This document shows positions 10,611 through 10,769 of a stretch of DNA of 64,000 nt, one piece after another; the first letter of the stretch is position 1, and each line of letters starts with the position of its first letter. The position numbers and the translations under genes were made by a program. Below the pieces are notes generated by a model, which saw only the letters and a list, made by a program, of their open reading frames with translations, had not been told where the DNA came from and made no database searches. The stretch lies in the IMG/VR virus record IMGVR_UViG_3300045996_002337, positions 248,001 to 312,000 of that record, one strand, 5' to 3'.

Positions 10611-10686
10611 TGGCCGCCTCGCTGGGGATCGAACCCAGGACCAATCGCTTTTAGAGGGCGCTGCTCTACCGCTGAGCTACAAGGCG
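10611..10686 (-). tRNA. Amber-suppressor tRNA (anticodon CTA), copy B
   Basis: cgc-c-ct-CTA-aa-a-gcg arm; D-arm gctcagcggtagagc; T-arm ctgggttcgatccccag; G73-CCA. Confidence 0.85.
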
Positions 10687-10692
10687 AAAATT

Positions 10693-10769
10693 TGGTGCGT
10701 CGTAAGGGATTCGAACCCTTGATCAAGTGTTTTAGAGGCACTAGCTTTAGACCGCTAAGCTAACGACGC
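10693..10769 (-). tRNA. Amber-suppressor tRNA (anticodon CTA), copy A
   Basis: agtg-c-ct-CTA-aa-a-cact arm; acceptor gcgtcgt/acgacgc; A73-CCA; TG-TATAAT just upstream. Confidence 0.88.

What the first reader, a model, noticed from the sequence alone, without database searches (positions are those of the whole stretch)
10611..10769. Two divergent amber tRNAs share an identical 9-nt CCUCUAAAA anticodon region but differ in acceptor identity
Seen: both have a C31-A39 mismatch flanking a CU-CUA-AA loop, but their bodies differ (C1-G72/G73 versus G1-C72/A73, different D-loops). Inference: the shared loop despite body divergence points to selection for UAG decoding. They may insert different amino acids or rely on a phage-encoded synthetase or modifier. 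No aaRS is visible in this window.
Basis: partly seen in the sequence, partly recalled or inferred. Interest (0 to 1): 0.7.

Follow-up and report, generated by a model that had tools for sequence, protein, structure and literature searches.

The report
Paired amber-suppressor tRNAs in a jumbo phage
Two real, back-to-back tRNA genes that read the UAG stop codon sit in a 350-kb phage that still uses the standard code. They look built for charging by two different host enzymes, a pairing seen in many phages, but what they act on is unknown.

Summary
Window 10769..10693 (-) and 10686..10611 (-) are two intact tRNA genes with a CUA anticodon. ARAGORN and Rfam agree on the register. Both carry CCUCUAAAA with a C31·A39 mismatch. 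One has G1-C72/A73 and the other C1-G72/G73.

The window lies in a 349,660-bp single-contig jumbo phage with 51 tRNAs and a two-piece tmRNA. Xanthomonas phage XacN1 (published 2018) has the same tandem A73-then-G73 pair, so this is a new member of a known kind.

New context found here:
- The CUCUAAA loop is fixed in 103 of 103 unique phage CUA tRNAs gathered, though all three scan patterns required it. C31·A39 is a hallmark of a large subset.
- In 18 of 22 non-redundant adjacent amber-tRNA pairs, the two members have different discriminator bases.
- The genome is not TAG-recoded. The four aaRS families searched gave no match. TAG ends only about 3% of crudely called genes.
- A sister phage carries two UGA suppressors at the syntenic spot.
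- The genome encodes a domain-1-less RF1-like gene whose conserved in-frame UGA replaces a conserved Trp codon.

Best reading: these are working, host-charged suppressors of two identities that perturb UAG termination. Their amino acids, efficiency and targets are unproven.

The parts
10693..10769 (-). supA: tRNA(CUA), G1-C72, C2-G71, G3-C70, A73, encoded CCA; D-stem GCUU/AAGC; C31·A39 mismatch
   Evidence: ARAGORN; Rfam RF00005 at 64.3 bits with alignment. The body is closest to Lys(UUU)-type phage tRNAs and to the CUA tRNA of Stenotrophomonas phage RAS14, 58/77.
10611..10686 (-). supB: tRNA(CUA), C1-G72, G2-C71, C3-G70, G73, encoded CCA; only 3 Watson-Crick pairs in the anticodon stem (G27·A43 and C31·A39 are mismatched)
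   Evidence: ARAGORN; Rfam at 52.5 bits. It is 89% identical to the single CUA tRNA of relative G005. It shares a 24-nt run (last two acceptor bases, D arm and anticodon-stem 5' side) with this genome's own tRNA-Asn(GUU).
10730..10738 (-). CCUCUAAAA of supA (positions 31-39; anticodon CUA at 10735-10733)
   Evidence: Sequence; register from Rfam.
10649..10657 (-). CCUCUAAAA of supB (anticodon CUA at 10654-10652)
   Evidence: Sequence; register from Rfam.
10779..10786 (-). TGTATAAT, a -10-like element ending 9 nt upstream of supA; no -35 match; a weak candidate only
   Evidence: Read from the sequence. The consensus scan did not call a promoter here. XacN1 has TAAGAT at a similar offset.
11276..11719 (-). 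Two-piece (permuted) tmRNA, tag ANEANYRMAA, about 500 nt upstream of the pair. It belongs to a recurrent arrangement of tmRNA, suppressor tRNA(s) and HD protein.
   Evidence: ARAGORN; Rfam RF04321 at 129 bits and RF01850 at 110.9 bits. The same neighbourhood occurs in XacN1, L011/L013/L022, L029 and G001.
8058..8597 (-). HD-domain protein of unknown function that lies within 1-3 kb of the suppressor tRNA(s) in several related jumbo phages
   Evidence: Weak Pfam HD match, E 0.001. tblastn shows synteny in L014, L020, L024, L029, L087, L141 and in G001, G002, G004. At least 1,530 uncharacterised homologues.

Best explanation
These are two functional phage-encoded amber-suppressor tRNA genes. They sit in a long minus-strand gene array of a jumbo phage that uses the standard genetic code. 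They belong to a widespread phage tRNA(CUA) family with a fixed CUCUAAA loop and, in this clade, a weakened anticodon stem (C31·A39). They form a deliberately non-identical pair: one has A73 and a GCG... acceptor end, the other has G73 and a CGC... acceptor end. Two different host aminoacyl-tRNA synthetases should therefore charge them; the four aaRS families searched gave no match in the genome. A73 plus U35 points to LysRS. G73 points to a G73-dependent enzyme such as GlnRS or AsnRS. Once charged, they compete with host RF1 at UAG. No phage gene contains an in-frame UAG and few phage genes end in UAG, so the likely targets are host mRNAs, or termination in the infected cell in general, rather than recoded phage genes. 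They appear to act with the adjacent phage tmRNA as a translation-termination toolkit. Shown here: gene structure, register, family membership, the paired design, standard code, no match to the four aaRS families searched. Inferred: expression, charging, amino-acid identities, efficiency, targets.
For: Structure and register.
Purifying selection on the fold: 17 of 19 consensus pairs show compensatory changes across 38 family members.
Conservation of the pair: XacN1 has the same tandem A73-then-G73 pair with a 7-nt spacer, although nucleotide similarity in the 4-kb query around the pair (window 10000-14000) is otherwise absent.
Design rule: 18 of 22 non-redundant adjacent CUA-tRNA pairs in IMG/VR have different discriminators (expected 56%, one-sided p = 0.012). 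Two of the other four combine a long-arm and a short-arm tRNA.
Same body, different acceptor: the two XacN1 copies are 100% identical outside the acceptor stem and position 73. L200 and L230 pairs are 0.86-0.88 identical in the body. This fits homogenisation of the body with selection keeping the acceptor ends apart.
The C1-G72/G73 end occurs in 7 unique suppressors but in only 1 of about 440 ordinary phage tRNAs from the same loci.
No recoding: removing TAG as a stop gives no specific ORF gain, there are no coding-supported in-frame TAGs on the gene-bearing strand, and all candidates are antisense shadows.
No aaRS of four families.
TAG ends 13 of 434 crudely called genes (3.0%), although the TAG trinucleotide is nearly as common as TAA genome-wide. 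XacN1 has 18 amber stops among 592 genes (PMC5852040).
Against: There is no expression or charging evidence; no public run holds this region.
The anticodon stems are weak (3-4 Watson-Crick pairs), which could mean low decoding efficiency.
Stop-codon avoidance does not track suppressor possession in relatives. G002 and G004 each have one CUA tRNA yet 11-13% TAG stops. G001 has two UGA suppressors yet 53% TGA stops. The suppressors are therefore probably inefficient, timed, or aimed at specific sites.
The genome also encodes an RF1-type factor, which would oppose amber suppression if it is active on UAG.
The amino-acid assignments rest on E. coli identity rules recalled from the literature and on a nearest-neighbour classifier with only 66% leave-one-out accuracy.
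Confidence: 0.55

Rival explanations
1. Insurance or pre-recoding stage. The suppressors have no dedicated target. They detoxify a rare stop codon by rescuing UAG nonsense mutations in a very large genome. This would be the intermediate step that Borges et al. proposed on the path to TAG reassignment.
For: TAG is the rarest stop (3%), there are no in-frame TAGs, and the model is stated in 10.1101/2021.08.26.457843. The XacN1 authors likewise found no read-through targets.
Against: It does not explain why pairs are systematically of two identity classes. It does not explain why a sister phage with 53% TGA stops carries two UGA suppressors at the same spot. The Borges model starts from low GC content, and this genome is 51% GC.
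Confidence: 0.2
2. Programmed read-through of a few specific phage UAG stops, making C-terminally extended protein variants.
For: About 9-13 phage genes end in TAG. Weak anticodon stems would fit low-level, ratio-setting read-through.
Against: Extensions after TAG stops are no longer than after TAA or TGA stops (median 13 versus 12 and 15 codons). None combines length with coding potential. The TAG-terminated genes show no common function. XacN1 read-through gave no homology.
Confidence: 0.1
3. A role outside decoding. The tRNAs could be decoys or replacements that blunt host tRNA-targeting defences such as anticodon nucleases. Alternatively they could be processing or punctuation elements in the polycistronic transcript.
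For: The anticodon-stem and loop features are unusual (C31·A39, and 27:43 mismatches). The bodies resemble Lys- and Asn-type tRNAs, whose relatives are known nuclease targets (recalled knowledge). supB ends 8 nt before the denV-like start codon.
Against: The strict conservation of CUA in a canonical 7-nt loop, the encoded CCA, the intact acceptor stems with compensatory changes, and the switch to another stop-codon anticodon (UCA) in the sister phage all point to stop-codon decoding as the selected property.
Confidence: 0.1
4. Mis-called or decaying genes: a different anticodon register (for example UCU, Arg) or pseudogenes.
For: ARAGORN labels them 'tRNA-Pyl', which is only a naming convention. 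supB has two mismatches in its anticodon stem.
Against: Two independent methods agree on the register. The scores are far above the Rfam threshold. Both genes have full cloverleaves, GG in the D-loop, a GTTCGA T-loop and CCA. Orthologues are conserved at 74-89% identity in other phages.
Confidence: 0.03

Closest known systems
The two tRNA-Sup(CUA) genes of Xanthomonas phage XacN1 (AP018399.1; Yoshikawa et al. 2018, PMC5852040)
   Same: Tandem on one strand with a 6-7-nt spacer. The upstream copy has A73 and the downstream copy G73. Both have CCUCUAAAA with C31·A39 and an encoded CCA. A permuted tmRNA lies nearby. Both phages are jumbo phages with more than 50 tRNAs and about 3% amber stops, and no read-through targets were found.
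   Different: The XacN1 copies are identical outside the acceptor stem, whereas here the bodies differ (57/81 identical). The acceptor sequences differ between the phages (the G73 copy has G1-C72 in XacN1 and C1-G72 here). The tmRNA is downstream of the pair in XacN1 and upstream here. The XacN1 pair lies in the terminal repeats and so is present twice. The paper did not comment on the A73/G73 difference or on the tmRNA.
Suppressor tRNAs of stop-codon-recoded phages (Lak, crAss-like, Agate, Jade; Borges et al., 10.1101/2021.08.26.457843)
   Same: Phage-encoded tRNA(CUA) that reads UAG in a standard-code host, sometimes found together with a phage release factor.
   Different: Those phages have in-frame TAG codons in late genes, and RF2 where a factor is present. 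This genome has no in-frame TAG and encodes an RF1-type factor.
Laboratory amber suppressors of E. coli (supE Gln, su7 Trp-derived, synthetic Lys/CUA and others; recalled from Normanly/Kleina/Miller 1990, plus PMC13276491)
   Same: A CUCUAAA loop with A37-A38. CUA tRNAs tend to be charged by LysRS or GlnRS through U35, with the discriminator base steering the choice.
   Different: Those carry Watson-Crick 31:39 pairs and arise by a single anticodon change. The tRNAs here differ from their nearest Lys- or Asn-type neighbours at positions 31, 34, 36 and 39 and across the whole acceptor stem.
tRNA-Pyl (ARAGORN's label)
   Same: CUA anticodon only.
   Different: These have an ordinary D-loop with GG, a 5-6-nt variable loop, a GTTCGA T-loop and a 5-position anticodon stem. 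None of the compact tRNA-Pyl features is present.

Membership tests
Canonical elongator tRNA (Rfam RF00005) | Cloverleaf with a 7-bp acceptor, 4-bp D stem and 5-bp T stem, G18G19, a T-loop GTTCRA, and a score above the gathering threshold | tested here: met
   64.3 and 52.5 bits against a threshold of 29; ARAGORN cloverleaves
Amber-suppressor tRNA | CUA at positions 34-36 of a 7-nt loop, with U33 and a purine at 37 | tested here: met
   The loop is CUCUAAA in both genes, and two methods agree on the register
Amber-suppressor tRNA | The tRNA is expressed, aminoacylated and reads UAG in vivo | not testable with these tools
   No sequencing run holds the region
XacN1-type tandem suppressor pair | Two CUA tRNAs head to tail, an A73 copy then a G73 copy, both with CCUCUAAAA and an encoded CCA, with a permuted tmRNA within about 1.5 kb | tested here: met
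TAG-recoded (code 15) phage system | In-frame TAG codons in conserved genes, or a gain in coding density when TAG is read as sense | tested here: not met
   Window coverage is 0.871 under code 11 and 0.886 with TAG as sense, a smaller gain than for the TGA or TAA controls. There are 0 supported in-frame TAGs on the minus strand, and the candidates are antisense shadows
TAG-recoded (code 15) phage system | A phage-encoded RF2 | tested here: not met
   The genome has one RF-1-domain gene. It scores as RF1 (153.6 bits) rather than RF2 (86.2 bits) and has a PPT tripeptide
tRNA-Pyl | Compact D-loop, 3-nt variable loop, 6-bp anticodon stem, and no G18G19 or TΨC consensus | tested here: not met
   Ordinary tRNA features are seen. 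A search for pylS was not run.
Suppressor tRNA with a cognate phage synthetase (as in the Jade-phage module) | An aaRS gene in the same genome | tested here: not met
   No match to PF00152, PF00749, PF00579 or PF00587. Other aaRS families were not searched.

The most novel reading that the evidence does not exclude
Standard-code jumbo phages carry a dedicated termination-interference module made of a tmRNA plus a pair of suppressor tRNAs. The pair is built on a shared body but has two different acceptor identities, so that two host synthetases feed one stop codon. The targeted stop codon can switch between sister phages: UAG here and in XacN1, UGA at the syntenic site in relative G001. In this lineage the module is coupled to a domain-1-less RF1 homologue whose synthesis depends on reading a conserved UGA as Trp, which would act as a sensor of termination capacity analogous to the prfB frameshift.
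Probability: 0.25. Interest if true: 0.75.

Novelty: new member of a known kind. Interest (0 to 1): 0.5.

Why it matters
Suppressor tRNAs in phages are usually read as evidence of stop-codon recoding. This genome, XacN1 and most of the paired examples found here use the standard code. That leaves open why a virus would weaken one stop codon in the cell it depends on.

The regular pairing of two identity classes gives a concrete handle on that question, as does the swap of UAG for UGA suppressors at the same locus in a sister phage. Each tRNA can be tested alone for the residue it inserts and for its effect on host termination.

Natural suppressor scaffolds with unusual acceptor ends (C1-G72/G73) and a conserved C31·A39 may also interest people who engineer the genetic code.

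Tried and rejected
1. TAG recoding. I compared stop-to-stop ORF statistics under four codes, ran a codon-usage scan for in-frame TAGs, and checked six candidates by homology. All were antisense shadows of strong minus-strand genes.

2. Read-through extensions of TAG-terminated genes. They show no excess length or coding potential, and PHROGs/Pfam found no shared function. One is a primase N-terminal fragment followed one codon later by TGA.

3. A phage aaRS. Four Pfam families gave no match.

4. Isotype assignment by similarity. k-nearest-neighbour classification on 367 phage tRNAs reached only 66% leave-one-out accuracy. It suggests a Lys-type body for supA and the XacN1 clade, and an Asn-type body for supB, but it is not decisive.

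5. Self-insulation (the phage purges the stop codon it suppresses). Relatives contradict a simple version. TAG stops are 3.0% (two CUA tRNAs), 5.0%, 11.2% and 12.7% (one each), and 7.7% (none). G001 keeps 53% TGA stops despite two UGA suppressors.

6. Expression evidence. The sequencing-run index gave only low-share metagenome matches and no RNA. The sigma-70 scan found no promoter next to the tRNAs.

7. The HD-domain neighbour. The homologue search returned more than 1,500 unnamed proteins and gave no functional clue.

8. Literature. No paper in the library describes heterologous suppressor pairs, the C31·A39 feature or the tmRNA linkage.

Full report
**What is there**

The window is bases 248,001-312,000 of a single 349,660-bp contig with 51% GC. 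IMG/VR classes it as a 97%-complete virus. It carries 51 tRNA genes and a two-piece tmRNA, almost all on the minus strand. It is therefore a jumbo phage.

At the reported coordinates ARAGORN calls two tRNAs with anticodon CUA: 10693-10769 (supA) and 10611-10686 (supB). They are 6 nt apart on the minus strand, and both have an encoded CCA. The Rfam tRNA model scores them 64.3 and 52.5 bits against a threshold of 29. Its alignment places CUCUAAA in the 7-nt loop, which fixes the anticodon as CUA and rules out the UCU register. It marks 31:39 as non-canonical in both, and 27:43 as non-canonical in supB.

- supA has G1-C72, C2-G71, G3-C70 and A73.
- supB has C1-G72, G2-C71, C3-G70 and G73.
- Their D-loops are 9 and 7 nt long.

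**Is it more than chance?**

The shared loop is not special in itself. All 103 unique phage CUA tRNAs that I collected have CUCUAAA, although all three scan patterns contained that heptamer. CU-NNN-AA is also the commonest loop among phage tRNAs with A36 (49 of 95). The unusual part is C31·A39. It is present in 12 of 68 CUA tRNAs from the two scans that left position 31 free, but in only 1 of 95 ordinary A36 tRNAs from the same loci. The 9-mer is therefore the hallmark of a large family of phage suppressors.

Across 38 family members, 17 of 19 consensus base pairs show compensatory changes. The consensus anticodon stem shrinks to three pairs. The fold is under purifying selection, and the weak anticodon stem is a retained feature.

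**Relatives**

Xanthomonas phage XacN1 has the same arrangement: two tandem CUA tRNAs 7 nt apart, the A73 copy first and the G73 copy second. Both have CCUCUAAAA and CCA, and a permuted tmRNA lies about 1 kb away. Apart from the tRNA pair, the 4-kb query around it (window 10000-14000) matched XacN1 at only one other short place, so the two phages are distant.

The XacN1 paper noted 'two suppressor tRNA genes' and only 18 amber stops among 592 genes. It found no read-through targets (PMC5852040). It did not discuss the different acceptor ends or the tmRNA.

Single related CUA tRNAs occur in Xoo-sp13, Stenotrophomonas RAS14/CM1, Pectobacterium CBB and Sinorhizobium Phosso.

**The pairing rule**

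A scan of IMG/VR for two CUCUAAA loops at tRNA spacing, added to the earlier loci, gave 22 non-redundant adjacent pairs. In 18 of them the two discriminator bases differ (56% expected from base frequencies; one-sided p = 0.012). Two of the remaining four combine a long-variable-arm tRNA with a short-arm tRNA.

Several pairs have nearly identical bodies but unrelated acceptor stems: XacN1 at 100%, and L200 and L230 at 86-88%. This suggests that the bodies are homogenised while selection keeps the acceptor ends apart.

The C1-G72/G73 end of supB recurs in seven unique suppressors, including Phosso and relative G005. It occurs in only 1 of about 440 ordinary phage tRNAs examined.

**Which amino acids?**

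The genome has no match to four synthetase families: Lys/Asn/Asp, Glu/Gln, Trp/Tyr and class IIa. Charging must therefore be by host enzymes.

By similarity, supA and the XacN1/Xoo-sp13 clade are closest to phage tRNA-Lys(UUU). The Xoo-sp13 suppressor shares its D-stem, its anticodon stem (GGAG/CUCU) and its T-stem with that phage's own Lys tRNA. The two differ at positions 31, 34, 36 and 39 and in the acceptor stem. supB shares a 24-nt run and G73 with this genome's own tRNA-Asn(GUU).

The classifier has only 66% leave-one-out accuracy. From recalled E. coli identity rules, a CUA tRNA with U35 and A73 tends to be taken by LysRS, and one with G73 by GlnRS. AsnRS and AspRS also use U35 and G73. 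I therefore predict Lys for supA and a different residue (Gln or Asn) for supB, with low confidence.

**What is it for?**

The genome is not recoded. Treating TAG as sense adds less ORF coverage than treating TGA or TAA as sense. No in-frame TAG with coding potential on both sides exists on the gene-bearing strand, against 10 same-frame junctions for TGA and 17 for TAA. All six candidates overlap strong antisense genes.

TAG ends 13 of 434 crudely called genes. Extensions beyond those stops look like non-coding sequence, and the genes share no function.

I fetched four related genomes of about 350 kb to test whether phages purge the stop codon they suppress. The result is mixed:

| Genome | Suppressor tRNAs | TAG stops |
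|---|---|---|
| This genome (G000) | two CUA | 3.0% |
| G005 | one CUA | 5.0% |
| G002 | one CUA | 11.2% |
| G004 | one CUA, one UCA | 12.7% |
| G001 | no CUA, two UCA | 7.7% |

G001 also has 53% TGA stops despite its two tandem UGA suppressors.

The G001 opal pair lies in the syntenic position, in the gene order NAMPT, tmRNA, suppressor pair, HD protein. The locus is thus a conserved cassette whose stop-codon specificity has switched.

Taken together, the suppressors are probably of modest efficiency or timed in expression. They act on termination in the infected cell rather than on recoded phage genes. The phage's rare use of TAG fits this reading but does not prove it.

**A related side finding**

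The genome's only release-factor gene lies at genome 195126-194455 on the minus strand, outside the window. It has these features:

- It is RF1-type (153.6 bits for RF1 against 86.2 for RF2).
- It has a PPT tripeptide and a GGQ motif.
- It lacks domain 1.
- It contains one in-frame TGA.

The TGA is conserved in two relatives at 71% and 53% protein identity. It aligns exactly with the conserved Trp of the ...QGW... motif in canonical RF1.

G001 has UGA suppressors that could read this codon. This genome has no UCA tRNA, so read-through would depend on near-cognate decoding. That resembles a sensor of RF2 capacity. It is the opposite of the RF2 expected in TAG-recoded phages, and it complicates any simple model of amber suppression.

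**Verdict**

The finding is real. It is a new member of the XacN1-type suppressor pair, not a new kind of element. The added value is the context:

- the family-wide C31·A39 hallmark;
- the rule that paired phage suppressors differ in identity class;
- the cassette's switch between UAG and UGA in sister phages;
- the RF1-like gene with a UGA in place of a Trp codon.

Function, charging and targets remain inferences that need the experiments listed under decisive next steps.

Noticed in passing
Outside the window: genome 194455-195126, minus strand (L007 1087-1758): A domain-1-less RF1-type release-factor gene (PPT and GGQ motifs) lies 12 nt downstream of tRNA-Arg(UCU). It has a single in-frame TGA, conserved in two relatives (71% and 53% identity), which aligns with the conserved Trp of canonical RF1. 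This looks like programmed UGA read-through or a sensor of termination capacity.
   Followed up: partly
Relative G001 (IMG/VR contig of 342,591 bp), 199793-199869 and 199929-200005: Two tandem opal-suppressor tRNAs (anticodon UCA, both A73, different acceptor stems, same T arm) lie next to a tmRNA. They are syntenic with the amber pair of this window (NAMPT, tmRNA, suppressor pair, HD protein). That genome still ends about 53% of called genes in TGA.
   Followed up: partly
window 11276-11719 (-): A phage-encoded two-piece (permuted) tmRNA with tag ANEANYRMAA. Permuted tmRNAs lie within a few kb of CUA tRNAs in XacN1 and in at least a dozen IMG/VR loci. The XacN1 paper does not mention a tmRNA.
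   Followed up: partly
window 8058-8597 (-): A 179-aa HD-domain protein of unknown function recurs within 1-3 kb of the suppressor tRNA(s) in at least eight related jumbo-phage contigs. It has more than 1,500 unnamed homologues in metagenomes.
   Followed up: partly
window 10225-10602 (-): A pyrimidine-dimer DNA glycosylase (T4 endonuclease V, DenV-like; Pfam PF03013, E 1e-11) starts 8 nt after the CCA of supB. The tRNAs are therefore embedded in a tightly packed co-directional gene array.
   Followed up: no
window 13133-14533 (-): A nicotinamide phosphoribosyltransferase gene (NAD salvage), shared with many jumbo phages. It is the only protein-coding part of this neighbourhood with nucleotide-level matches in isolated phages.
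   Followed up: no
window 1-2364 (-): The end of a large tRNA array, with duplicated Pro(UGG), Ala(UGC) and Thr(UGU) genes and some odd calls such as tRNA-Ser(ACU) and a poorly scoring Ala(UGC). Some may be degenerate copies.
   Followed up: no
IMG/VR loci L157, L187, L202, L209, L222, L225 and L163/L203: These loci have tandem amber suppressors made of a Gln-like tRNA (UGGGG... acceptor, G73) and a long-variable-arm tRNA. L157 and L209 were the only paired loci where treating TAG as sense specifically raised coding coverage, which suggests truly recoded phages that feed UAG with two tRNA classes.
   Followed up: no
Outside the window: genome about 242,190-242,272 (-): A tRNA-like stretch with a GGTTCGAGCCC T-loop and a UUCUAGUUA loop region that ARAGORN does not call. 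It may be a degenerate tRNA.
   Followed up: no
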